64,000 nucleotides of DNA from Epithemia pelagica (lineage: Eukaryota > Protista > Bacillariophyta). The notes beneath the pieces are model-generated. The model was not told the DNA's origin, made no database searches, and saw only the letters and a program-made list of their open reading frames with translations. Of this stretch, positions 3,601-16,079 are shown piece after piece. How positions within the stretch are numbered: position 1 is the stretch's first letter; each line of letters opens with the position of its first letter. Location of the stretch: positions 868,001 to 932,000 of the forward strand of contig OX337230.1 in NCBI GenBank assembly GCA_946965045.2, written 5' to 3'. The translations under genes and the position numbers were made by a program.

Positions 3601-6600
3601 AATAACATCTCTGAAACCTACAGAGCAGACAGGGATGAAGCAGAAGAAGGCCAGAATAGAAAACCTTCTCGGGATGCTGGTTCCCGCCCTTCGCCTGATG
3701 AAGCGGCGAAAGAGAATGAAGATGAACATTGGAGGATAATTGATGATGGTTCAGCGCCTTTACTTGAGGTTTACGAAGTTATGTCGAGATACGGTCGTGA
3801 GAAGATGAAAGAGGCTTGTGCACGGAAGGGAAAGCCGTATAGGGCGAGCAGAATTGTCAAAATCTTCGATGAACTGGAAAAATGCATCGACAACGGACAT
3901 CATATCGATATTTTGACGTCTGTGCTAGAGCGTATCCGTGGGAGAAAGAGTATCTATTCGATTTCTGATTATTTCACGGACCTGATAGCTCGAGCCGAGA
4001 ACATGATACGACATCCCGATGCTCCAATTGACACTACACATAGCCAGGTACCCAAGATCCGTCTACATTCAGATGAGAGCAGCACCTACATTGAAGAGAC
4101 GGCGTTCTTGTACCACGATCCCATAACTTGTGCCGAAGCGTGGAACAGCCCTGAAGAAGGCACAGACCACCCCTCTGTCTTACCTCCAGCGCCCGATATT
4201 TATGGTTGTTTTGAAGCAGATTCTGAAGACAAACACTACTCTTTCAAGTATCATTTCGAGGAGGAACAACGAGTTCTCCTTTGTGACTTCAGTGGCCTAG
4301 CTTATGATCAGTTATCAACTCGCGATTTAAAGTTCTTTGCAAGCATGCTTGAACGCGATGATATCACTGTCGTCTCGGAAGGACTCGTCGATCCTGACAT
4401 ACTTGACCAAGACATGTGGGATTTAAAGGTAAGTTTACATGGTCTTGAATGGGCTCCTGCTGATTCGTACCAGTTTCTGAATTTGTTGAATGACCTGTCT
4501 TTTTCTGCTAAGTTTTTCGGAAATGCATTGAAATGTCGAAAACACCACAAGTTCAAAAGATTCGTAAAAAGTGCGCATCACCCCGCAGAATACTCAGAAA
4601 CTGATCATATGTTGGAAGGCAACATTGGAACTTTTATCAAATATTTGAGAGCCAATCATAATATTGTCAATTCAGATCAGGAAGGACCTTCGTCAACTTT
4701 CGAGTTTCGACAATCGGATGGAAATGACGTAAGTATTGATGTCCAGAAAGATGTGGTCTACATGATCGATGTCGATCTTCCACGGCTTCTTCCGAAACAT
4801 CACGTTGACTTTGTTAACAATTTCAAGATAAAGGAAATTCTTCCCGGAGGAAAATTGTGTATGATGAACAGTGTGAGTTGACTAGATTTCGGAGGCCACA
4901 ACATCGAACGCCCTTTCATCATTCTCACGTTGCGTTGTCGCAGCTTCCAGTCTCAGCGCGACCATTCATGGGCCCAAATCTCTATGTTACTCCTGGTGGA
5001 GCGTACACACATTTCCACCAAGACGGAAATGGAACCGTCGACTCCGGACACTACTGCTTAAGTGGGTACAATGAGGTCGTGATGTTACGAAGATTACCGG
5101 AGCGGCACAAAGCCGAAGCAGCTCGCCTTCTCCCCAATCGTGGTTGCTACGATGCTCTCTACAAGTTCCCGCACGAGAATGGACAGGTACGCTTTCTGGA
5201 TTACGAGCAGTGATTGTCATGTTGTGTGTGATGAATTTGTGTTGTCTTACCTCTTCTTCTCATGTAACAGAAACCGGATTGGCCGTCATCGGAAACCATT
5301 GCAGCTTGGAAAGCAATGTGGTACGCTCGAAAGTTGCGCTTAATTATCTTGTGAACTCTGTACACTTACTTCGTTTTCATTTATTCTTTTCGTGAGGAAG
5401 TTACTACCCTTCTGTTTTCATCCTCAAACCTGGACAGCATGTTCATATAAACAAAGGACGCCTTCATGCTTTTCGAAAAATGACAGTGGATACACTTCCC
5501 GAGAATGATTGTCATTTCGAACTCCGAAAGAAGTTACTTGGTAAACATAAGATGCATAAGCCTCCAATTTGCATTAGTGTCGCATGGGATTGGCAGTTCT
5601 CTGGTGTTAATGCTGAAAGCATTAACAGGGAGGTGACATCTTGTTTGGAATGTCAAGCATTGGTCGATCAACGACGCGATCTAAAATGTCTCGCGATCCC
5701 CAAGGCTTCTATTCTTGCTCATGGATACATGAGTCGAGCGCTTTGGCAAACACAACGTATGCAAACGAAGTCGTTTTTACCTGCAAATGTTTCAGGGGCA
5801 AAAGCAGGGTTAATCGACAGACATGCCTTTCTGTCGGGGATTTCCCCCTCTCTTGTCCATATTCTTGAGCAGAATATATCATTTATCGATATGGCTATGA
5901 AGAAGATTACTACGAATACTCCGGCAAATTCGTTACATGGGATTATAAACATTGCTCCCTTCAATGATACAGAAGCAAATCCCTTGACATCGGCAATAGA
6001 TCCCGACGGTAATGATTACTTTTGCACGCTCTGTAGCAAGGAACTTGAAAACGTGTATTTGCACTGTGATGGTTGTGAACAGTTGCTGCACAAGGATTTC
6101 AATATCTGCATGGAATGCTATCAAGGTGGATATTGGAGGGCTACTGTTGACATGCAGAACAGAGGGTTTCAGCATCCCATTGACAGGACGAGTTGTATGA
6201 ACCACATCGGCGATGTTCAGAACAATCGTGGGATCTCACCGTGTAATTGCATAGGGGGCAGTCCCTGTCGCATATGTAACCTTTGCACTGGTAAGTCACC
6301 TCCTTCTTCCACATTATGTATGTTTTCGATAAACTTACAAGCAGCGATCTTGTAGCATGCAGCTGTATCTGTCATCGCTCTATGACCCTACACCGACGCT
6401 TCTACGGCCTTGATGAATTGAAAGATCTGTTGACATGGGTGAAATCACATATGACGACGGAGTCAGTGAAATACGGATACCTGACCAAGCCGAGATTACG
6501 CGTGGCTGCGGATCGGTTTGGAGTGGGTCACAAAGAGAAAATGTCACTGTTTGCCATGCCTCAGCATTTCCCCGGTAAACAGAACGTCACACAGCAATCT

Positions 6601-7206
6601 GAGTGTCACCAGGCAATAGTTTTGCCTGCATCTGCCGTAGAGCAAGTTGACGAATCCAATGATGAGACTTTGCGCCATGGTGTCTCAGTGCACTTTCCCA
6701 CTAGCGAGTCGAATGAACTGGCACACATGTCGGCAAATACGGAAGATGGTAAATCAGAAGGTGTGGCTAATTTTTCTCAATTGCAACGTCCTACTGGCGA
6801 GTCGAATCAACCGGCCCATGTGTCGGTGACGATTGAAGATGTAAACAAGAACGACGACGTGGCTAAATTGGCACCTTCCAAACCCGTCATCGACAATGAT
6901 ACGAACATGGATAACCATGAGCGACATGTATGTGATGCGAACAGAAACGCAGACCATGAAATGCAGCTGGCCAACTCAGTTGCAGCCGCTCCGACCGAAA
7001 GGGCAGTTCTTCAAGCTCCATGCGAGATGCGTACTGAAACATTGCTCGCTTCAGCCATCGAGGATGAGGGAACCACGGTCAACTATTGTGAAACTGAGAA
7101 TGTCCTGAGCAAAATTGGACCTATCCCCCATGGTGAACGCAGCGAAAGGTCAAATAACGACCAATCGGATGAAGTTGAAGAGGGGAATGTCGGGGTGATT
7201 GTTTAG
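679..7206 (+). CDS. Large JmjC-domain protein (putative Fe(II)/2OG dioxygenase or demethylase) with C-terminal Cys-rich/ZZ-like zinc-binding region; ~2075 aa, 5 exons (679-4872, 4944-5186, 5271-5320, 5401-6290, 6356-7206)
   Basis: ORFs 679..4881, 4857..5213, 5480..6355 and 6316..7206 join in frame through GT-AG introns (donors gtgagt 4873, gtacgc 5187, gtacgc 5321, gtaagt 6291). Spliced protein has YVTPGGAYTHFHQDG (HxD) and LKPGQHVHINKGRLHAFRK (distal His) plus SVAWD, then CTLC..CDGC..CMEC and CNC..CRICNLCTACSCICH clusters. Confidence 0.85.
2260..3160 (+). repeat. Degenerate ~132-bp (44-aa) coding tandem repeat, about 7-8 units, in the disordered N-terminal half of the JmjC gene
   Basis: An identical ~61-bp block (ggatcgctccgctcctcctccacagtcacagcccgcccaaactgatacggctgcttctaaa) occurs at 2562 and 2694 (period 132). 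The protein repeats xNxxTEDGTEVVxGDxSAPP. Confidence 0.85.
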
Positions 7207-7513
7207 TTTCTGCACCCTTGTAATCGTGCCTGTTAGATGTTAGATGACCGATCAAAAAGCTTTGAACTATGGACCAGCTAGCTCTACTAGAGGAGTATAC
7301 CTCTTGCTCTCTCTGTGTTTGCTGGATAGACTTTTGAATAAAGCGACTAAGTTCGGACGACAGACAGACTCAATAACTGCGACCGTGTGCGGTTCACACG
7401 ATGTGTCAGCCCTTTTTTCGCCCTTTTTTTCGCTTTTCACTCCAAAAACCGAAATCGTCCGATCGGTATGTGTTTGAGTCAACAAACACTGAGCCTGTAC
7501 AAAGCAATTGACA

Positions 7514-10500
7514 ATGGGAGTCCAAGGTTGGAACTGGCTGCTTGAAAAGGAGGGATTTCTTCCTGAGCGGAGAGGGAAGAGAGTCAGCAGGTGTTCCATT
7601 TGGCGCGATGAGTCCGCCATGAAATCGACCACGTTTGCATCGCGCGTAACCGTGATTCCTGACGGGTCGGAACTTCACGTGGGTAAGTGCATTCATCAGG
7701 TCTAATTCATGAGTCCGCCGCTTCTCATGTGGGTTCTTTTGACCATTATGATGGAATGAATTATTTGATGTGAAGATGGCAATGGTTTGGCATTTGCGTT
7801 GCATCACGTTGCCTATGCACGTCATATCACACAGGTACTAGAGGGGAAACGAAATGGCAAGATGCGTAACCATGGCAACGCCGTTGGTGCAAAGTCTTTG
7901 AAGAAAATATTATCAACCATTTCGACGAGACAAGCTTGTCGATTGCTGCCCAACTTCATGCCAATGCATATCTTATCAGAGGTTACTCGTGAGTTCATAT
8001 CGCAGCTGAAGGACAGACATCACATGAAACTAGTGGGTAAGTTCGACAACCTTTTGCTTTCCAGGAACTATTGAGTGCATTCTTCTCATCAATATCTCGT
8101 GGTTCGCTTTCTCAAGTCTATTGGGATGGAGATGCGCGTCGCGTCTTCAAGGCTGCCACAGACGAGAAACGTCAAGAGCACCATCCGGAAGAGTGGTCCA
8201 ACCTGCAATTGTATTGTATGAATGGGGTCTTTCCAGCAGTGACCACGTCTTTTGAATTGGAGTCTGCCTTCCCCAAAAGCCGATTCTTCATCACCGAGAT
8301 ATTAGAAACTCTGCAGAAATATGGTGTTCGTCAGGTTCGTTGTGACGAAGAGGCCGATGCAGCAATAGCTCAAGCTGTCTCTGGACAGCGAAACGCCTAC
8401 ATTGTAGGTGAAGACTCTGATTTTTGTTTCTTTCCGTCGGTCAACTACATTCCATTGAGCACATTAGATGCTGGAAGCATGGACGTTGTCACAGCCGTTG
8501 TTTTGAGAAGAGATGAACTAGCCCAGGAGCTTGATCTCCCAGACGAATCCTCTATGATTGAATTGGCCATCTTAATGGGAAACGACTATATTAACCCTAA
8601 AACTGCATCTCTCAATTTGTTTGATGTGGAAGAACGGAGTGCTCCCATAGACTTTCTCAAAAACCAAGGGACTGGCTATCGAGTGACAAGCATGGCGGAG
8701 GACACGGAGGAAGCTTTGTCTTTTGTTCGAGCATTGTACGAGTTGAAACCACTGGACGATTTTGAGCTTGATGATGCTCAAAACGAAAGTAACATGGTGG
8801 ACGATGACGATGATGACGACGACGATGATGAATTAGCGATGGACATTGTTGCTGACGAAAATGACAATAGTACGAAAGCGTATCGGCCAACTGTTCCTCG
8901 CTCCATGCCCGTGAAATTATTGACTGTCGACTTTCGAGTCGATCGGTCACTGAAGGATGCAGTGATTCGCTGTCTTCAGGCCTACGTGGATATGACGGAA
9001 TCCAGAGAGGATGCGATGTTAACTCAAGAGCACTTGGATGTTTTTAAAGCAATGCCGTTTCCTATTGCTGAAACGCATGGATCGTCCCCGAAAGATGAGA
9101 CGGTCGATGCGGCCTGGCGACCATGCTGGTCTGATGTCCCGGCAGCCTATCTCATTGAGAAGATGATCGCCATGTCGATGGATCAAAAGTCACTTGTAGC
9201 ACATGCGGCATTGCCGTCTTCAATTTTCAATCAACTTTCGTTCATGGAAAAAATGAATGAGATTCATGAATCCAAGAGGAAAGCGGACGAACCCGAAGAA
9301 GAACAGATATTTTCGCCACCTGAAGGGGAGTTCGATATGGGAGAACACCATAGACTACCGATTGATGATCACGAAGATGAAATCTTGGAGTCGATTGCGA
9401 GGAATCGAGTAACCATCATACAGGGAGAGACTGGATGCGGGAAGTCCTCTCGTATACCTGTCATGCTTCTGAATGCGCCTCCACCTGACCCAAAGCTTTC
9501 CCAAGTAAAAATGTTCATTTCTCAGGTATGTAGTTTGGCTAAGAAGAGTTTTCACAGAAATGTCTCTCACTGAAAAGAAATGCTTCATAGCCAAGACGGA
9601 TTGCGGCTAAGGGTTTGGTTGAAAGAGTTCGTTCAGTTGAACCCGAGCTGGGCAAAGTGTTTGCTCTCAGATTGGGTCATGGATTACGAGAGTACGAGTC
9701 GGACGAAACACGGGCATGGTTCTGTACAACTGGGTATCTGTACGTGGACTCAAATATTTCGAGGCTGATTCCTATTACTGTCTTCTCACCTTTTCGATAT
9801 CGGCTTTTGTAGAGTGCGTCTCGTCGCGAACCATCCGGAAAGATTCAATGATGTGTCCCACCTTATCATGTAAGTTGTGAATCCGCCATCAGCAAAAGTT
9901 GTGATGTTGTCGCTTACAAGTTTGCTACATAGCGACGAGATTCACGATCGAGGGGTTGATCTCGATCTGCTTTGTTTACTCTGTCGACGCTTGCTTCGAG
10001 TCAATTTACATTTGAGGCTCATTCTCATGTCAGCAACTCTTGCTGCTGCACTTTATCAAGAATATTTCGATGTGGCTGAGCCTCCAATCCAAGTTGGTGC
10101 ACGACGATTCCCTGTCAGGGAAGTCTATCTGGAAGATATGCTCGAGGGGAATGTAGTCTCGCTCAATCAGAAAGCGCAGAAGACTGTCCGCAGTATAATG
10201 GTGTCATGTGACAAAATGCAGGCGAAGTCTTCCCCTCAAAGAGGCTACGTTGAAGATCTCCAGTCCCTCACCACAAACATTGTCGCGTCGATCGGGAAGG
10301 GCGGAACATCCATTTTAGTTTTCGTCCCTGGTATGAATGAAATCATTTCAATCATCGAACAAATTGGTGAGCTTTTCATCCCAGGACTCAATTTCACGAC
10401 TATTCCAGTTCACAGTGATATTCCTTTCGAGGACCAACTTGCTGTTTTCTCTAAAACTAAACTGGATGAATGTCGGGTGATCGTCGCAACCAACAGCGCC

Positions 10501-13500
10501 GAGTCGTCTGTGACATTACCCGCGCTCGATCATGTCATCGATCTGGGTCTTCAGAGACAGATTATTTACAACGACGCTTCTCACCGACAGCTGCTTACTC
10601 TCACATGGATATCAAGGGCCAGTGCGACGCAGCGGGCGGGCCGAACTGGACGCATAAGAAATGGAAACGTCTACCGACTCTTCACTCGTGAGTGCTACGA
10701 AAACCAAATGAAGAAGTTTGAACCAGGAGAAATGTTGCGCATTCCCTTGGATACCGTGATATTGACATTGAAAGGCATTCTGCCTAACGAGGAGTCTGCC
10801 ACAAAGGTTCTTCTTGAATGCCTGGAACCTCCAAACGGCACAACAATAGAAAGATCGCTCATTAGTCTGCACGATTCTCGCTTTATCACAAGTCCCGACG
10901 ATGAAGGCGAAATCACAACATTGGGGACGTTTGTCTCCTCTCTTGGAACTGATTTGTCTCTTGGAGCTCTTATTGGCCTCGGTATCCAGTTTGGAGTTGG
11001 TCCAGAAGCAATTCAGCTTGCTGGGGCTCTCAGTTTTGGGACGAAGCCTCCATGGATCATAAGCAATAAGTTGCTTCATGGAGCAAAAGAATTCTACAAC
11101 GTATCCGCGGAGACGTTTGTTTCCAGATGCCACTTTGGGAGCAATGGGTTTTCCGAACCCTTTGCAATCATGAACCTCATCTGGGATTATCGCGAGGCTG
11201 AGAAGAAGCAGGGCTGGTGCTGGAAATACAGAGTATCGCACCAACGAGTACAACAACTCTCTTCAAGTTGTTTCGACTTGCAACGGCGAGTGGCAAACCT
11301 CTTTAACATTCGTCCGGAGTTTCTGGATATGGAGTCCCCTCCTCGCTCCATGGTACCGGCAAAACTTGCAATTCTACGAGTAATCCAAGTGTGGGTATTT
11401 AACGATACCATGATAGAATGGACACCGGAGAAACTTCCTAAGGAGAATGAAGCCAACGAGTATGTTGTCCCGCTTTTGTCGAAAAGCAATCAAATCAGTG
11501 TTGAACATTTCGATGGGATTCTGAAGAAAGAGAGACATCCTTTTGAAATCCGACTAATTAGGACCGTTGAACAGGTCGGGTTGGTCAAGCCTAGTCAAGA
11601 AATGGATGATTCACTGAGTGGGGTACTTGATGAGCGACTCGTGTCTTATGCAATTGAGCAAGGACTAGCTATTGTCTGTTATCGATCCAAGAAAGTTTGC
11701 ATTGGTTTCGTAAGCACCCAAGTGCCTTTGTCAGAAGTTTCTGGCGTCGAAGCCATTTTGGCGCAACGACTTTCGTACATGGGAACAGTTGGAGGACGAC
11801 CGGTGTCGGGGAAAGTTCGTGGATTATCAGAGCGGGCATGCGGGAGGTGGAAGCTTGTTGGGATAGACGGGAATCAAGATGGACTTCACAGCTTCAGGTT
11901 CTATTCCTCGAGTGAGTTGGGAAGTGGAAAGACTCTCAAATCACTCGATCGAGATCTCCTTCGAGCAATGGAAGTTTGCCAAGCAAAGAGTATATTTTTC
12001 CGTCTGACATTGGCAAAGGGCAAAAGTCAATCGTGCTCTTTCTCGATGTTCCTAAACGGGAAAGATGCCGAAGCCATCTCTTCAAGGGATCTAAAAGACA
12101 TTTTCGCTTCTTTGGACGAAATTAATCCAAAAACAAGCGAAGTTATCCGTCGCCAGGAACTTGTTTTCCCGATCACTGATTCCGGTCCATGGAACCCGAC
12201 GAATGCCAAGAAGAACGGCGACAGCAGCAAGTGGTCGCGGCCTCTCGTCCAATGCATCCCAGAAGGAGCTCACGTACTGCATGCTTTGGCTTCAGCGTCT
12301 AGAAGAGGGCATTATGTGTTGCTTGGACCTGTGTCAAGTGATGACGATGGATCTCAGAAGGAAGGGGAGGAGGAAGAGGAGGAAGAAGAATTCTTGGAAC
12401 TACACTTGGACCGAGAGCAATTTGGTTCTTGGGGAAAGATTCCCCAGGGATCTGTTGTGTTTCTTCCTGATTTGTCTGTTCCAGCTACAGCGATACCCTT
12501 AAATGGAAAGTCTCCATTACAATGTTGCTGCGCCAATACGTTGGACATTCGTGGGGGTTCAGTGCGAGTCGAGGGCCTCACAATGTTACCACCAGGGCGT
12601 GCGTTTTCCTTTTTCTCCCGCCTTTGCTTTGGACTCGAACCAGAGAGGGAAGATTGGACTCCTTCTTTCGCTTCGTTGGGAGTTGATGGAGGTGACATTC
12701 CAGATGAAGACCATGATGATTTTCTGCAGCGTTGCTTGAAAGCAACAAATCTCAACGAGAGATCAGTCGAACTGGGTGAAGAGCTTGTTTGTGACCCATC
12801 ATTTGTGGTGGATTTGCTTGATGTATTCGATGGTCTCCAGGGCTGTGAAGCTAGACCATGGCCGAATCTCAAAAAGAACCCTTTCACAGAATCAAACTTG
12901 AGAAAAGGCAGAGAAAGAAGCCGTTCCGTTCCACGTGCGACGAGGAATAATGGGAAATCTTCTGCACAAGATATATCCTCGCCGCAAGTTGTTCCGGCCA
13001 CTTCGAAACCGACGATCTCGAACAGTTCGAATGGGAGATCTCCAAATCGCTCACTCCTGCGTTCAGAATCGCAAACAAGCGATTTCGCTCGAACGGAATT
13101 GAACCAGGCGGCTCATCCCGCACCCAATCGGCAGTCGTCCAGAGTTTCCAGATTGGCTACAAGCGACGCTGAACAAGTGTCATGGCCTTCGAATATGTCC
13201 AAGTTGTTTGTTACAGATCTGGAAAAAGGCCAAGCAGTCGGAACAGACGTGTTGGCCTCTCCCAACATTCTTGCACTTGTTCTTAAAACGTACATGAACA
13301 AGACTCCTAATTTCAAGTTCCAGGGACCAAACTCAAATTGGGAACTTATACGAATAATGGATGGTGCATCCGAATACTTCCAGGCAAATTTCCAAGCCCT
13401 CGAATTATGTCCGCTGGTCAACAAGGAAGCGGACGGAACCCTTCCAGAATGGATCAAACAACGATGGAAACCTACTGCCCTCTTGGATGTTCTTGATTGC

Positions 13501-13770
13501 GTTCCGAACATGTTTTGTACGGATTTGCTCACTGGTTCGTTTGAAGGTAAGGGTGGCGTGTTCTTTCAATCCATCGAAACTGCGATTCGCATGGAATCTG
13601 CAATGTGGTTGGAAGGACAGTTTCGTGTGGACTCGAAGCATTGGTTCCAGATGTCGATTGACGATATGGTTGGCTTGTTGCAACGAGACGCGGGTAAAAA
13701 GCCCTCCGGCAAATCGAAAAAAGGAAGAGGAAATCGTCAAATGAAAGGGGCTCCCAAGAAAGGGAATTGA
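7514..13770 (+). CDS. Fusion protein: N-terminal FEN1/XPG/Asteroid-like PIN nuclease plus DEAH (DEIH)-box helicase with HA2 region and long C-terminal extension; ~1960 aa, 6 exons (7514-7682, 7776-8036, 8117-9525, 9591-9739, 9813-9869, 9933-13770)
   Basis: Start MGVQG. Splicing rebuilds LHVDGNG and VVYWDG; EEAD, EDSDF and LMGNDY follow. Helicase motifs: GETGCGKS (same ORF as the nuclease), QPRRIAA, IIDEIHDR, MSAT, LVFVPG, TNSAESSVTLP, QRAGRTGR. Exon lengths sum to 5883 nt = 1961 codons. Confidence 0.88.
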
Positions 13771-14303: not shown

Positions 14304-16079
14304 TTACTCGGACGACTGGTCCGTGGTACTGACAAGCAATGGTGTCGTCCCGGTGCCTGTGGCTCCGTCTGGTTTGTGGTCGATTCCTCCTCCTTCCTTG
14401 TCTACAAAGACATGAAAGAGGGGTGGTTGAGGAATTTCATGATCCGATGCCAAATCGACAATCCAACATCCTTGCAAGGTAAGTAATCCCGTAGCCAAGG
14501 GCAAACAATGGACCTTGACGACAGTCGATCCGCCTTGACCGGCCAGGGTACCCAAACTCACAAAACTGGGACCACAAATGGTCAATTCCGTCATTTCCGA
14601 CAGGCGGAATTGCAACTGCAAGGTCAAGGCTTGTGCGGCATGATTGACGACATAAAATTGAACCTCTGTTGGTTCATGACATGTCATGCGACGAGGGGGG
14701 TGAATGGGATCAACAGTCACCGGGAGAGGCGAAGCCAATAAGGAATGAGCCGCCGACAAGGACGAGGCCGAAGATCGATGAGGCGTTCCTCCTCGACCAC
14801 TTCGTTGGACGGCTGCCAAGGCAGCGACATCCACAGACAAACCGGATCGATGCACAACAAAATTTTGCGGTAGTGGTTTGGACTCTTTGCGCAAACGCGA
14901 GGATGGTGGCAATATGGATCCACCCGTCGGCCACGGAACAGCAATGGCTGGACATGAAATGGTCGGCGAGGCAATCCGTCCTTGTTCACCCATGCTTTTG
15001 CGCCAGGTAAAGACAGCCGTCCCCAATTTATCCCCTGCTGCCAAACCCTTGTCCGAATTGGTTTGTACCAAAAACAAATAACGCACCACCGATCCAGGCG
15101 TCATCCAGCCCGATGCATCCAACAATTGCGTCGCAGACAAGTCTTGTTGTTGTTGTTGCACGGCGGAGGCATTCTCCGCGGTCGTCGTCTTCGTTGTTGC
15201 GGAAGAAGATGAGGATACCAGAAAGGGTGCCGTCGGACCAATTTGTTTGGCGACGAGGCCTTCTGTGGGGACAAAGGTAGCATCGGTCACCACCATGGGC
15301 GACCACGAAGTTCCTGCCGCCGTGGCACCTGCAGCATTGCTGTTCGCATTTGTGTTGTTGCCGGAGGAGGGTACTTGATATTCGACGGTAATCGAAAGCC
15401 AACAGGCTTGATCTCCAGCCCGCAAAGCAACCGTCCGAAGGGACAAGGGATTGACAACTTGAAAGCGATAAAATTTACGAAAGGTTTTGATTCCTCCTTC
15501 CACCGACGCATAACTGACTTCAATCCGTAAAATGTGTTGTCCAGCTTCTTCAATGGCATGTGACACAATCGTGTCCACCACAGCTCCCACTGGTACATCG
15601 ACACCACCACTCCCACCACTGGCTGCGGCTTCCAATGGCGAAGGCAATTGAAATCGTTGACTGGGTGTTTGCAAATGCGCCGATACGGACAATCGACGAA
15701 TTGTCACACTACGACTCACATTCAAGACGCCCAAATAGGCCGTAAAGGTTTCTCCTACCAATACTTGGAGGGAATCGGGCAAACACATGGCATTGTGCAA
15801 CAAGGGTTGACCGTTCAAGGGGCCACCACTGCTGGGCATGTGCAATTCCGGACTTTGCAATCGCATCACACGCAAGGTGGGAACGGACGACGAAGATTCG
15901 GTACTCGCAGTTGCTCCTGCCGCTGTCGAAGTCCCCATGGGAGATGGGGGTGGCACCGATGCAGCCAACGAGGCATCCATGGTCGAAAGGGTGGATGACG
16001 ATGAGGCAGGAGACTGGGGCATACTTTTATTCATGGCACGGTTCATAGCAGACGATGGTGCTGGTCGTTGCGACGACAT
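14304..16079 (-). CDS. TRAPPC13: Trafficking protein particle complex subunit 13 (DUF974)
   Basis: LRVMRLQSP, LPDSL..VGETF..YLGVLN, LQTPSQR, GQHILRIEVSY and FRKFYRFQVVNPL match TRAPPC13-type motifs. Single 591-aa ORF from ATG 16079. Confidence 0.88.
   Translation of the reverse strand: MSSQRPAPSSAMNRAMNKSMPQSPASSSSTLSTMDASLAASVPPPSPMGTSTAAGATASTESSSSVPTLRVMRLQSPELHMPSSGGPLNGQPLLHNAMCLPDSLQVLVGETFTAYLGVLNVSRSVTIRRLSVSAHLQTPSQRFQLPSPLEAAASGGSGGVDVPVGAVVDTIVSHAIEEAGQHILRIEVSYASVEGGIKTFRKFYRFQVVNPLSLRTVALRAGDQACWLSITVEYQVPSSGNNTNANSNAAGATAAGTSWSPMVVTDATFVPTEGLVAKQIGPTAPFLVSSSSSATTKTTTAENASAVQQQQQDLSATQLLDASGWMTPGSVVRYLFLVQTNSDKGLAAGDKLGTAVFTWRKSMGEQGRIASPTISCPAIAVPWPTGGSILPPSSRLRKESKPLPQNFVVHRSGLSVDVAALAAVQRSGRGGTPHRSSASSLSAAHSLLASPLPVTVDPIHPPRRMTCHEPTEVQFYVVNHAAQALTLQLQFRLSEMTELTICGPSFVSLGTLAGQGGSTVVKVHCLPLATGLLTLQGCWIVDLASDHEIPQPPLFHVFVDKEGGGIDHKPDGATGTGTTPLLVSTTDQSSE

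What the first reader, a model, noticed from the sequence alone, without database searches (positions are those of the whole stretch)
7514..13770. Single-polypeptide FEN1/XPG/Asteroid-type nuclease fused to a Spindle-E/TDRD9-like DEAH helicase
Seen: the ORF track hides the N-terminus. Exons 7514-7682 and 7776-8036 splice to give MGVQG...LHVDGNG...VVYWDG. Acidic residues matching all seven FEN1-family catalytic positions appear (VDG, WDG, EAD x2, DSD x2, GND), as does the helical-arch K...R pair (FKAATDEKR). The nuclease runs without stop or intron into Walker A GETGCGKS within ORF 8071-9573, so the fusion is not a gene-model artefact. Helicase motifs I-VI are intact and ~800 aa of unassigned C-terminal sequence follow. 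Established: FEN/XPG PIN domains are metal-dependent 5' structure-specific nucleases and DEAH/RHA helicases translocate 3'->5'. From recall, motif V AESSVTxP is typical of TDRD9/Spindle-E and plant DExH8 rather than DHX36/57 (AETSIT). Inference: a coupled unwind-and-cut machine for small-RNA-guided transposon silencing, R-loop or G4 processing, or RNA decay. I know of no characterised protein with this architecture.
Basis: partly seen in the sequence, partly recalled or inferred. Interest (0 to 1): 0.82.

Follow-up and report, generated by a model that had tools for sequence, protein, structure and literature searches.

The report
Conserved FEN-type nuclease fused to DEAH helicase
This diatom gene really does encode one 1960-residue protein that joins a flap-endonuclease-type cutting domain to a DEAH/RHA unwinding motor; the same uncharacterised fusion is conserved, catalytic residues intact, in other stramenopile algae, chytrid fungi and a choanoflagellate.

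Summary
A six-exon gene (7514-13770, + strand) encodes 1960 aa. Contigs of run X4 carry all five modelled introns removed at exactly the predicted GT..AG sites. The N-terminal ~345 aa are a FEN/XPG-superfamily nuclease by profile (FEN-1, E 3e-10) and by fold (ortholog model pLDDT 89.5; Foldseek to FEN1, E 4e-9). All seven acidic positions and the arch Lys/Arg are present, and eight of these nine sites are near-invariant in 187 relatives (D57 is D in 125 and unaligned in 62). One exon carries six of the seven acidic positions and Walker A. Helicase motifs I-VI are intact.

The fusion is not diatom-specific. It also occurs in pelagophytes, chrysophytes, Spizellomyces, a record filed as Batrachochytrium salamandrivorans, and the choanoflagellate Diaphanoeca. 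The helicases of these fusions form one clade (SH-aLRT 100).

The "Spindle-E/TDRD9-like" label is not supported as membership. There is no Tudor domain, and scores tie with DHX36, DHX29 and DHX9.

The C-terminal ~800 aa match no known family. They hold one module conserved across the family and, as a weak lead only, a terminal dsRBD-like fold.

No paper on this architecture was found. The unwind-and-cut mechanism is inferred, not shown. I rate it a new variant of a known kind (helicase-nuclease fusions), interest about 0.62.

The parts
7514..13770 (+). Whole coding region: six exons (7514-7682, 7776-8036, 8117-9525, 9591-9739, 9813-9869, 9933-13770), 1960 aa, stop at 13768-13770.
   Evidence: Model built. 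All five introns are seen removed in contigs of run X4.
7514..8721 (+). FEN/XPG-superfamily nuclease domain, aa 1 to about 345, spread over exons 1-3 and starting at Met1-Gly2 as in FEN1.
   Evidence: Pfam XPG_I_2 31.3 bits (cut-off 24.2) on exon 3. Family profile against PDB: FEN-1 1b43 E 3.3e-10, then Rad2, EXO1, GEN1 and XPG. Ortholog model pLDDT 89.5; Foldseek to FEN1 5um9 E 3.9e-9.
7682..7777 (+). Codon of catalytic Asp57 (LHVDG), split by intron 1: g at 7682, at at 7776-7777.
   Evidence: The splice is seen in X4. D57 is invariant in alignment A1.
8125..8172 (+). Asp147 of YWDG, then arch residues Lys155 and Arg162 (FKAATDEKR).
   Evidence: These align to the VFDG...K...R segment of FEN-1. 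Among 187 relatives, D is kept in 184, K in 184 and R in 186.
8350..8421 (+). Glu222 and Asp224 (EEAD), and Asp243 and Asp245 (EDSDF).
   Evidence: These align to SEGE/MEAE and QDYD/DDSD of FEN-1 and Rad2. Each is kept in 185-187 of 187 relatives.
8581..8583 (+). Asp299 of the MGNDY motif (helix-two-turn-helix region).
   Evidence: Aligns to GTDY/GSDY of FEN-1 and Rad2. Kept in 186 of 187 relatives.
8722..9348 (+). Linker, aa about 346-554, with a poly-Asp run (aa about 371-380) and a conserved helical segment before the helicase.
   Evidence: Translation and family alignment.
9349..11427 (+). DEAH/RHA helicase core with winged-helix and ratchet region, aa about 555-1180. Walker A at 9424-9447, DEIH at 9934-9945, SAT at 10030-10038, motif V at 10489-10521, motif VI at 10630-10653.
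   Evidence: Pfam Helicase_C 52.7 bits. DEAD is found in orthologs. PDB hits: DHX9, Spindle-E, DHX29, MLE, DHX36. The ortholog aligns to Prp43 through residue 642, the end of the ratchet.
11545..12177 (+). Confidently modelled alpha/beta region, aa about 1220-1430, ferredoxin-like. Detectable only in diatom relatives.
   Evidence: AF2 model blocks at pLDDT 84-94. Only weak matches by VIA-align (Z <= 5.8). Not found in distant family members.
12250..12687 (+). C-terminal module conserved across the family, aa about 1455-1600 (PEGA..LAS..RR ... CCAN.L...GG..V.G...LPP), fold unknown.
   Evidence: Invariant columns in A2. This is the only part of the C-terminal profile that also hits chrysophyte, pelagophyte and Spizellomyces members. 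No OB-fold similarity (hhalign probability 0.3%).
12925..13167 (+). Low-complexity, predicted disordered Ser/Arg/Asn-rich linker, aa about 1680-1760.
   Evidence: pLDDT 29-36.
13240..13707 (+). Terminal domain, aa about 1785-1940, with the motif RMEsAmWLEgQF. Possibly dsRBD-like. Seen so far only in relatives that align with the window's pennate-type C-terminus; the two centric rows shown lack the motif.
   Evidence: VIA-align hits: HYL1 3adg Z 5.0, rmsd 2.1, 68 of 72 residues; also DRB3, DRB4, DCL4 and Dus2 dsRBDs at Z 4.4-5.1. No sequence support. Alignment A3.
13690..13767 (+). Lys/Arg/Gly-rich tail. Reading it as a nuclear localisation signal is inference only.
   Evidence: Translation.

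Best explanation
The locus is an expressed six-exon gene of a diatom related to Epithemia. It encodes a 1960-aa member of an old, patchily distributed and so far unstudied eukaryotic protein family. In this family a catalytically intact FEN/XPG-superfamily 5' nuclease forms the N-terminus of a DEAH/RHA (DEIH-type) helicase, and a family-specific C-terminal module follows.

Shown: the architecture, its presence in spliced contigs, the intact active-site residues of both enzymes, and conservation of the fusion across distant eukaryotes.

Inferred from the known behaviour of the two enzyme classes: the helicase loads on a 3' single-stranded tail and moves 3'->5' along one strand. This peels the complementary strand from its 5' end. 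That freed 5' flap threads under the helical arch of the tethered nuclease and is cut at or near the junction, so unwinding and cutting are coupled in cis. The most likely substrates are RNA:DNA hybrids (R-loops), structured flaps, or duplex RNA in the nucleus. Whether it acts on RNA or DNA is unknown.

The confidence of 0.7 blends about 0.95 for identity and architecture with about 0.4 for the coupled mechanism.
For: Gene and transcript:
- The frame and the GT..AG introns come.
- Run X4 contigs have all five introns spliced out. Overlapping contigs run from the nuclease motifs (7862-8676) through the helicase to beyond 13300.

Nuclease:
- Pfam XPG_I_2 scores above its cut-off.
- The family profile hits FEN-1, Rad2, EXO1, GEN1 and XPG at E 3e-10 to 1e-7, with catalytic columns aligned.
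- The ortholog model has pLDDT 89.5 and pTM 0.89, and matches FEN1, EXO1, XPG and Rad2 over about 330-390 columns at probability 1.00.
- Eight of the nine active-site and arch positions are kept in 184-187 of 187 relatives. The first Asp is D in 125 and unaligned in 62.

Helicase:
- Motifs I-VI are intact.
- Best PDB matches are DHX9, Spindle-E, DHX29, MLE and DHX36.

Fusion conserved:
- More than 100 cluster representatives carry both domains. These include ORFs marked complete from MMETSP transcriptomes.
- Named sources outside diatoms are Aureococcus, Paraphysomonas, Dinobryon, Mallomonas, Diaphanoeca, Spizellomyces SPPG_08391 and a record filed as Batrachochytrium salamandrivorans.
- The 28 helicase domains sampled form one clade with SH-aLRT 100.

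The mechanism rests on established knowledge. DEAH/RHA helicases translocate 3'->5'. FEN-family nucleases thread 5' ends or flaps through the arch.
Against: - There are no biochemical, genetic or localisation data for any family member, and I found no paper.
- The relative geometry of the nuclease and helicase was not modelled, so coupling in cis is only a plausible reading. The two activities could act on different substrates or at different steps.
- The canonical OB fold of DEAH/RHA helicases, which helps form the nucleic-acid tunnel, was not detected. The helicase may therefore work somewhat differently from Prp43, DHX36 or MLE.
- No single X4 contig bridges 8647-8693, where the assembly graph breaks in all runs. 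A shorter internal isoform cannot be excluded from contigs alone.
- The dsRBD-like assignment, which would favour A-form duplex substrates, is weak (Z about 5) and has no sequence support.
- X4's kind is not on record; I take it for RNA only because of its spliced contigs.
Confidence: 0.7

Rival explanations
1. Small-RNA or transposon-silencing factor. On this reading the protein is a Spindle-E/TDRD9-type helicase working with Argonaute proteins, and the nuclease trims or degrades target or precursor RNAs.
For: Motif V AESSVTLP matches Spindle-E AESSITVP rather than DHX36 or DHX29. Spindle-E is among the top PDB hits. Automatic annotation calls the Seminavis members 'spindle-E'. There is a weak dsRBD-like terminal fold.
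Against: No Tudor domain or other piRNA-pathway module is found. The Spindle-E score ties with DHX36, DHX29 and DHX9. The family is a separate long-stemmed clade. From recall, not tested here, PIWI-clade silencing is not described in diatoms or chytrids.
Confidence: 0.15
2. DNA-repair or replication enzyme acting purely on DNA. Examples would be flap, gap, G-quadruplex or stalled-fork processing, analogous to Dna2, FEN1 with a helicase partner, or ASTE1.
For: The nuclease domain is closest to the DNA-acting FEN1, EXO1, XPG, Rad2 and GEN1 and to the XPG_I/XPG_I_2 families, not to XRN. From established knowledge, DHX36- and DHX9-type helicases also unwind DNA G4 and R-loops. The basic C-terminal tail is compatible with nuclear localisation (inference).
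Against: DEAH/RHA helicases are mainly RNA-dependent enzymes. No PCNA-interaction motif or other repair module was looked for or found. This rival overlaps the best explanation and differs only in substrate.
Confidence: 0.25
3. Pseudo-nuclease. On this reading the FEN-like domain has lost catalysis and serves only as a nucleic-acid- or protein-binding module of an RNA helicase, as in Mkt1.
For: Some FEN-superfamily members are non-catalytic (Mkt1, named in the literature hits). Pfam scores for the domain are low (20-31 bits).
Against: All seven carboxylates and the arch K/R are present. Eight of these nine positions are kept in 184-187 of 187 relatives spanning stramenopiles, chytrids and a choanoflagellate. 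That pattern is expected only under selection for catalysis.
Confidence: 0.05
4. Gene-model artefact: two neighbouring genes, a nuclease and a helicase, wrongly merged.
For: Prokaryote-style gene callers split the locus. P0001 is exon 6 alone, and many relatives of 500-1100 aa are on record.
Against: Six of the seven catalytic positions of the nuclease and Walker A lie in one uninterrupted exon. Spliced contigs tile the whole gene. Transcriptome-derived ORFs marked complete and reference-genome models in distant taxa have the same fusion.
Confidence: 0.02

Closest known systems
FEN1 / EXO1 / XPG (Rad2) / GEN1, the FEN-like group of PIN-domain nucleases
   Same: The fold is the same over the whole 340-380-residue domain (Foldseek probability 1.00, TM about 0.5-0.57). 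The start is MG.xG. All seven carboxylates, the arch Lys/Arg and the GxDY helix-two-turn-helix motif align.
   Different: Sequence identity is only 12-16%. The domain is fused to a helicase. There is an extra insertion of about 60 residues between strand 1 and the WDG strand. No PCNA-binding tail was identified. Substrate is unknown.
Asteroid / ASTE1 (Pfam XPG_I_2, PF12813)
   Same: The window's exon 3 scores above the XPG_I_2 gathering cut-off (31.3 against 24.2). Both are divergent stand-alone branches of the FEN-like group.
   Different: Only 10 of 30 family members match XPG_I_2, while 13 of 30 match XPG_I. I know of no helicase on Asteroid proteins (recall), and the PIN-superfamily survey records no such fusion. 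The family is better seen as its own branch.
DHX36, DHX9/MLE, DHX29 and Spindle-E/TDRD9 (DEIH-type DEAH/RHA helicases)
   Same: Walker A is GETGCGK, motif II is DEIH, and motifs I-VI are intact. There is winged-helix and ratchet similarity. These are the best PDB sequence matches at 120-131 bits for the window and 183-200 bits for the ortholog. Motif V is as in Spindle-E.
   Different: The family forms a separate clade on a long stem. It has no Tudor domain, no N-terminal dsRBDs, no DHX36-specific motif, no Pfam HA2 or OB hit, and about 800 unrelated C-terminal residues.
Helicase-nuclease fusions of other classes: Dna2, WRN, Cas3, archaeal Hef, AddAB/RecBCD, bacterial PhoH2 (PIN + PhoH)
   Same: The design principle is shared: a motor that exposes single strands tethered to a nuclease that cuts them. 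PhoH2 is recorded as a PIN-domain RNase plus RNA helicase (PMC5499597).
   Different: The domain families differ in every case. Examples are PD-(D/E)XK with SF1B, DnaQ exonuclease with RecQ, HD with Cas3-type SF2, XPF with Hef-type SF2, and VapC-type PIN with PhoH. None combines a FEN-type arch nuclease with a DEAH/RHA motor.

Membership tests
FEN/XPG (Rad2) superfamily nucleases | XPG_N plus XPG_I fold (PIN-like core with helical arch and helix-two-turn-helix) | tested here: met
   Profile against PDB: FEN-1 E 3.3e-10. Ortholog model matched to FEN1, EXO1, XPG and Rad2 at Foldseek E 3.9e-9 and probability 1.00. Pfam XPG_N and XPG_I are found in relatives.
FEN/XPG (Rad2) superfamily nucleases | Seven conserved active-site carboxylates | tested here: met
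   D57, D147, E222, D224, D243, D245 and D299 are present. Six align to the catalytic columns of FEN-1 and Rad2. Those six are kept in 184-187 of 187 relatives; D57 is D in 125 and unaligned in 62.
FEN/XPG (Rad2) superfamily nucleases | Arch Lys and Arg (FEN1 K93 and R100) | tested here: met
   K155 and R162 align to the K...R of FEN-1. The model has a long helix right after the WDG strand. K is kept in 184 and R in 186 of 187 relatives.
FEN/XPG (Rad2) superfamily nucleases | Metal-dependent 5' flap or 5' exonuclease activity | not testable with these tools
   Needs an enzyme assay.
Asteroid (XPG_I_2, PF12813) | Specific match to PF12813 rather than to XPG_I | tested here: inconclusive
   The window's exon 3 scores 31.3 bits on XPG_I_2 (cut-off 24.2) and 19.9 on XPG_I. 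Across 30 members, 10 match XPG_I_2 and 13 match XPG_I.
DEAH/RHA helicases | Motifs I, Ia, Ib, II (DExH), III, IV, V and VI | tested here: met
   GETGCGKS, SQPRRIAA, TTGYL, DEIH, SAT, LVFVPG, TNSAESSVTLP and QRAGRTGR are read from the translation. Pfam finds DEAD and Helicase_C.
DEAH/RHA helicases | Winged-helix plus ratchet (HA2) after RecA2 | tested here: inconclusive
   There is no Pfam HA2_N or HA2_C hit. However, phmmer alignments of the ortholog run through Prp43 residue 642, Spindle-E residue 717 and the DHX36 ratchet start.
DEAH/RHA helicases | C-terminal OB fold (OB_NTP_bind) | tested here: not met
   There is no Pfam hit. hhalign of an OB alignment from 8 reference helicases against the C-terminal family alignment gives probability 0.3%. 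No OB match came from the fold searches. A very divergent OB is not excluded.
Spindle-E / TDRD9 | Tudor domain C-terminal to the helicase | tested here: not met
   No Tudor family is found at E<=1 in the window pieces or at E<=0.01 in orthologs.
Spindle-E / TDRD9 | Helicase core groups specifically with Spindle-E/TDRD9 | tested here: inconclusive
   Scores tie: Spindle-E 127.5, DHX36 131.3, DHX29 127.9 bits. No TDRD9 row was available for the tree. Motif V agrees with Spindle-E.
Splicing DEAH helicases (Prp2/16/22/43) | Closest similarity to Prp-type cores, plus HA2 and OB | tested here: not met
   Prp43, DHX15, DHX8, DHX16 and Prp16 score lower than DHX36, DHX29, Spindle-E and DHX9 (102-114 against 120-131 bits; about 130-172 against 183-200). 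HA2 and OB are not detected. No Prp rows were available for the tree.
dsRBD-containing proteins | alpha-beta-beta-beta-alpha dsRBD fold and sequence signature in the terminal domain | tested here: inconclusive
   Several dsRBDs match aa about 1785-1940 at Z 4.4-5.1, the best being HYL1 with rmsd 2.1 over 68 residues. This is below the tool's noise guide of Z 8. There is no profile hit to PDB or Pfam.

The most novel reading that the evidence does not exclude
The family may be an ancestral eukaryotic 'unwind-and-clip' enzyme. A DEAH/RHA motor would feed the displaced 5' strand of R-loops, RNA duplexes or flaps directly into a tethered FEN-type active site. That would be a mode of nucleic-acid surveillance that was lost in animals, plants and higher fungi and therefore never studied. 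Its family-specific C-terminal module would be a new fold that replaces the canonical OB domain.
Probability: 0.3. Interest if true: 0.78.

Novelty: new variant of a known kind. Interest (0 to 1): 0.62.

Why it matters
Helicase-nuclease fusions such as Dna2, WRN, Cas3, RecBCD/AddAB and Dicer have each defined a pathway of genome or RNA maintenance. This is a combination of FEN-type arch nuclease and DEAH/RHA motor that I found described nowhere.

It is large, its active sites are conserved, and it is retained across lineages as distant as diatoms, chrysophytes, pelagophytes, chytrids and choanoflagellates. It is absent from the usual model organisms, which explains why it has been overlooked.

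It gives a concrete, testable candidate for R-loop, flap or structured-RNA processing in ecologically dominant algae. Transformable diatoms such as Phaeodactylum and Thalassiosira make knockouts feasible.

It also offers a natural system for asking how a 3'->5' motor and a 5' nuclease are coupled, and it carries about 800 residues of unassigned structure.

Tried and rejected
1. OB fold hidden in the conserved C-terminal module. By eye the motif pattern looked OB-like. hhalign of an OB_NTP_bind alignment (8 reference helicases, coordinates) against the C-terminal family alignment gave probability 0.3%, so I rejected it.

2. Fold searches with the 776-residue C-terminal model. Foldseek against PDB found nothing at E<=0.001. 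The Atlas search gave TM <= 0.23. VIA-align wide gave only generic ferredoxin-like matches (Z <= 5.8) and the weak dsRBD lead.

3. Sequence support for the dsRBD lead. The profile of the terminal domain had no hit against PDB at E<=10 and no Pfam family.

4. Giant-virus origin. A scan of IMG/VR with patterns from the nuclease alignment found no relative.

5. Word-index search from the Aureococcus nuclease region. It returned only five close relatives.

6. Literature. Five full-text searches and a reading of the PIN-superfamily classification (PMC5499597) found no mention of this fusion.

7. Earlier scan notes. Nothing relevant came up by place or by words.

8. The window's own spliced full-length protein has no single reference. 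It was analysed only in scripts and as exon pieces. The Epithemia ortholog P0002 stood in for the N-terminal fold; it is 66% identical over aa 1-380.

9. Many relatives of 500-1100 aa were not interpreted as true short forms. They come from short contigs and prokaryote-style gene calls that stop at introns.


Full report
**The gene.** The region reads as a eukaryotic gene with short introns. From the sequence and scripted translation I built a six-exon model: 7514-7682, 7776-8036, 8117-9525, 9591-9739, 9813-9869 and 9933-13770. All five introns are GT..AG and 63-93 nt long. The product is one open frame of 1960 aa. The ATG at 7514 is the first in frame after a stop. It opens with MGVQG, the start typical of FEN-family nucleases.

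**Transcript evidence.** Four public runs of one study hold this DNA. When their contigs were laid on 7350-13300, three runs kept the introns. The fourth, X4, showed all five introns removed at exactly the modelled sites.
- X4 contigs cover 7862-8035 + 8116-8676, which holds the nuclease motifs.
- They also cover 8647-9523 + 9589-9739 + 9813-9869 + 9933 to beyond 13300, which holds the linker, helicase and C-terminus.
- The two sets overlap by 30 nt at a point where the assembly graphs of all runs break.
- No single contig bridges that point, so contigs alone do not exclude an additional internal isoform.
- X4's kind is not on record; I read it as RNA only because of its spliced contigs.

Exon 3 is one uninterrupted frame that carries YWDG, the arch K/R, EAD, DSD, GND and Walker A. 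The fusion therefore does not depend on any splice.

**The nuclease.**
- Pfam places exon 3 in XPG_I_2 above its cut-off (31.3 against 24.2 bits) and in XPG_I just below.
- An alignment of 30 family N-termini (A1) searched against PDB sequences hits FEN-1 (E 3.3e-10), Rad2, human FEN1, EXO1, GEN1 and XPG.
- In that alignment the family's WDG, K...R, EAD, DSD and GNDY columns fall on the catalytic and arch residues of those enzymes.
- The AlphaFold model of the Epithemia ortholog's first 380 residues is confident (pLDDT 89.5, pTM 0.89). That ortholog is 66% identical to the window protein there.
- The model matches FEN1, EXO1, XPG and Rad2 over essentially the whole domain (Foldseek E 3.9e-9, probability 1.00).
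- In 187 relatives with a complete domain, eight of the nine active-site and arch positions are kept in 184-187. The first Asp (D57) is D in 125 and unaligned in the other 62.

This argues strongly against a pseudo-nuclease. Family members match XPG_I (13 of 30) and XPG_I_2 (10 of 30) about equally weakly. The domain is therefore a separate branch of the FEN-like group rather than a clear Asteroid member.

**The helicase.** Motifs I-VI can be read directly: GETGCGKS, SQPRRIAA, TTGYL, DEIH, SAT, TNSAESSVTLP and QRAGRTGR.
- By sequence, the best solved relatives of the ortholog are DHX9 (200.6 bits), Spindle-E (199.1), DHX29 (198.2), MLE (185) and DHX36 (183). Splicing DEAH proteins score about 130-172.
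- For the window's exon 6 the order is DHX36 131, DHX29 128, Spindle-E 127.5, MLE 122 and DHX9 120, against 102-114 for splicing DEAH proteins.
- The overall scores tie, and there is no Tudor domain.
- In a maximum-likelihood tree of 47 helicase cores, the 28 fusion-family rows form one clade (SH-aLRT 100, stem length 1.35). That clade is sister to a DHX36 / DHX57-like / DHX30 / plant dsRBD-helicase clade, together with two long-branch proteins that lack the nuclease. The tree is rooted on HrpA.
- No TDRD9, DHX29 or Prp-type rows were available, so placement relative to those is untested.
- Alignments run through the winged-helix and ratchet regions. Pfam HA2 and OB are not detected, and an explicit profile-profile test for an OB fold was negative.

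**Distribution.**
- The word-index search with exon 6 found many diatom proteins of 1.9-2.1 kaa with an MG.xG start and a Walker A at about residue 550-700. Pfam confirmed nuclease plus helicase in several of them. Some are ORFs marked complete from MMETSP transcriptomes.
- The exhaustive profile search with the nuclease alignment gave 149 representatives at E<=1e-30.
- Named members outside diatoms are Aureococcus (pelagophyte), Paraphysomonas, Dinobryon and Mallomonas (chrysophytes), the choanoflagellate Diaphanoeca grandis, and a record filed as Batrachochytrium salamandrivorans. Chrysoparadoxa appears only as an N-terminally truncated, helicase-only hit.
- Pfam or the family profile confirms both domains in these members.
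- The reference-genome protein SPPG_08391 of the chytrid Spizellomyces punctatus also has the nuclease (120 bits, residues 1-474) ahead of the helicase. This makes contamination an unlikely explanation for the chytrid occurrence.
- The family is therefore old and patchily retained. I did not test vertical descent with losses against transfer.
- No relative was found in IMG/VR viral contigs.

**The C-terminal half.** Pfam finds nothing there. The AlphaFold model of aa 1185-1960, built with 22 homologs, has mean pLDDT 69. It resolves into these parts:
- A confident alpha/beta region at about aa 1220-1430.
- A moderately confident module at about aa 1455-1600.
- A disordered linker at about aa 1680-1760.
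- A terminal domain at about aa 1785-1940, followed by a basic tail.

Foldseek and Atlas searches gave nothing useful. The exhaustive aligner gave only generic ferredoxin-like matches for the first region. For the terminal domain it gave a cluster of dsRBD matches at Z 4.4-5.1, the best being HYL1 with rmsd 2.1 over 68 residues. That is below the tool's noise guide and has no sequence support. I report it as a lead only.

A profile of the C-terminal region detects only the 1455-1600 module in chrysophyte, pelagophyte and chytrid members. That module is therefore part of the family's core, while the rest is specific to particular lineages. The terminal-domain motif was found in 19 stored relatives. 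The two centric rows displayed (Thalassiosira, Cyclotella) lack it, and Cyclotella ends in a Cys-rich segment instead.

**How it most likely works.**
- Shown: one polypeptide with two intact catalytic centres, conserved together over very long evolutionary distances.
- Inferred from what is established for the two enzyme classes: a DEAH/RHA motor loaded on a 3' tail moves 3'->5' and peels the partner strand from its 5' end. A FEN-type nuclease acts on exactly such 5' ends or flaps by threading them under its arch.
- A tethered pair would therefore unwind and clip in one pass.
- Substrates could be R-loop RNA, flaps, G4-adjacent duplexes or dsRNA. The basic tail and the weak dsRBD lead hint at nuclear, A-form duplex substrates, but this is speculation.
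- I rate the identity and architecture at about 0.95 and the coupled mechanism at about 0.4.

**Comparison and novelty.** The nuclease passes the membership tests for the FEN/XPG superfamily. The helicase passes for DEAH/RHA except for the OB fold. Membership of Spindle-E/TDRD9 fails on the Tudor domain. Helicase-nuclease fusions are a known kind (Dna2, WRN, Cas3, Hef, PhoH2), but none combines these two families. Neither the PIN-superfamily survey (PMC5499597) nor five literature searches mention this one. The sequences already sit in public databases under automatic names, so the novelty lies in recognising the family and its function, not in discovering the sequence. I rate it a new variant of a known kind, interest about 0.62.

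**Limits.**
- The window's spliced full-length protein has no single reference. It was handled in scripts and as exon pieces, and the ortholog P0002 stood in for the N-terminal fold.

Noticed in passing
window 14304-16079 (-): A 591-aa ORF is a TRAPPC13 homolog (TRAPPC13_N 103.8 bits, TRAPPC13_C 42.1 bits). It is convergent with the nuclease-helicase gene. The X4 contig that covers the helicase runs about 2.8 kb past 13300 and probably into this gene. That suggests close or overlapping 3' ends; an unstranded assembly does not show a single transcript.
   Followed up: partly
window 6316-7206 (+): A 296-aa ORF lies directly upstream and matches no Pfam family. It is acidic and Asn-rich. Whether it is a real gene is unknown.
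   Followed up: partly
window 7936/8617 and 8647-8693: A 130-nt contig joins 7936 to 8617 with CGTAAC between them. It is present in the intron-keeping runs X1 and X3 and in the spliced run X4, so it is not a splice. Contigs of all runs break at 8647-8693. This is probably a short repeat or a graph artefact.
   Followed up: no
window 7682/7776-7777: The codon of the first catalytic aspartate (D57) is split by intron 1. An ORF-only view therefore hides both the N-terminus and one active-site residue.
   Followed up: yes
P0303 (Spizellomyces SPPG_08391), and the C-termini of P0065 and P0031: C-terminal additions differ between lineages. Spizellomyces carries C2H2 zinc fingers. Cyclotella P0065 ends in a Cys-rich, zinc-finger-like segment where the window has its terminal dsRBD-like domain, and Thalassiosira P0031 also lacks that terminal motif.
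   Followed up: partly
P0176 (Nitzschia sp. Nitz4, 2982 aa): The nuclease profile matches at residues 2299-2604 of a 2982-aa model that has a LYAR zinc finger and no helicase Pfam hit. This may be a mis-merged gene model or a different architecture.
   Followed up: no
P0013 and P0028 (Seminavis robusta): Seminavis has two paralogs of 2002 aa each, both auto-named 'spindle-E'. They do not pair as sisters in the helicase tree, which suggests an older duplication within pennate diatoms.
   Followed up: no
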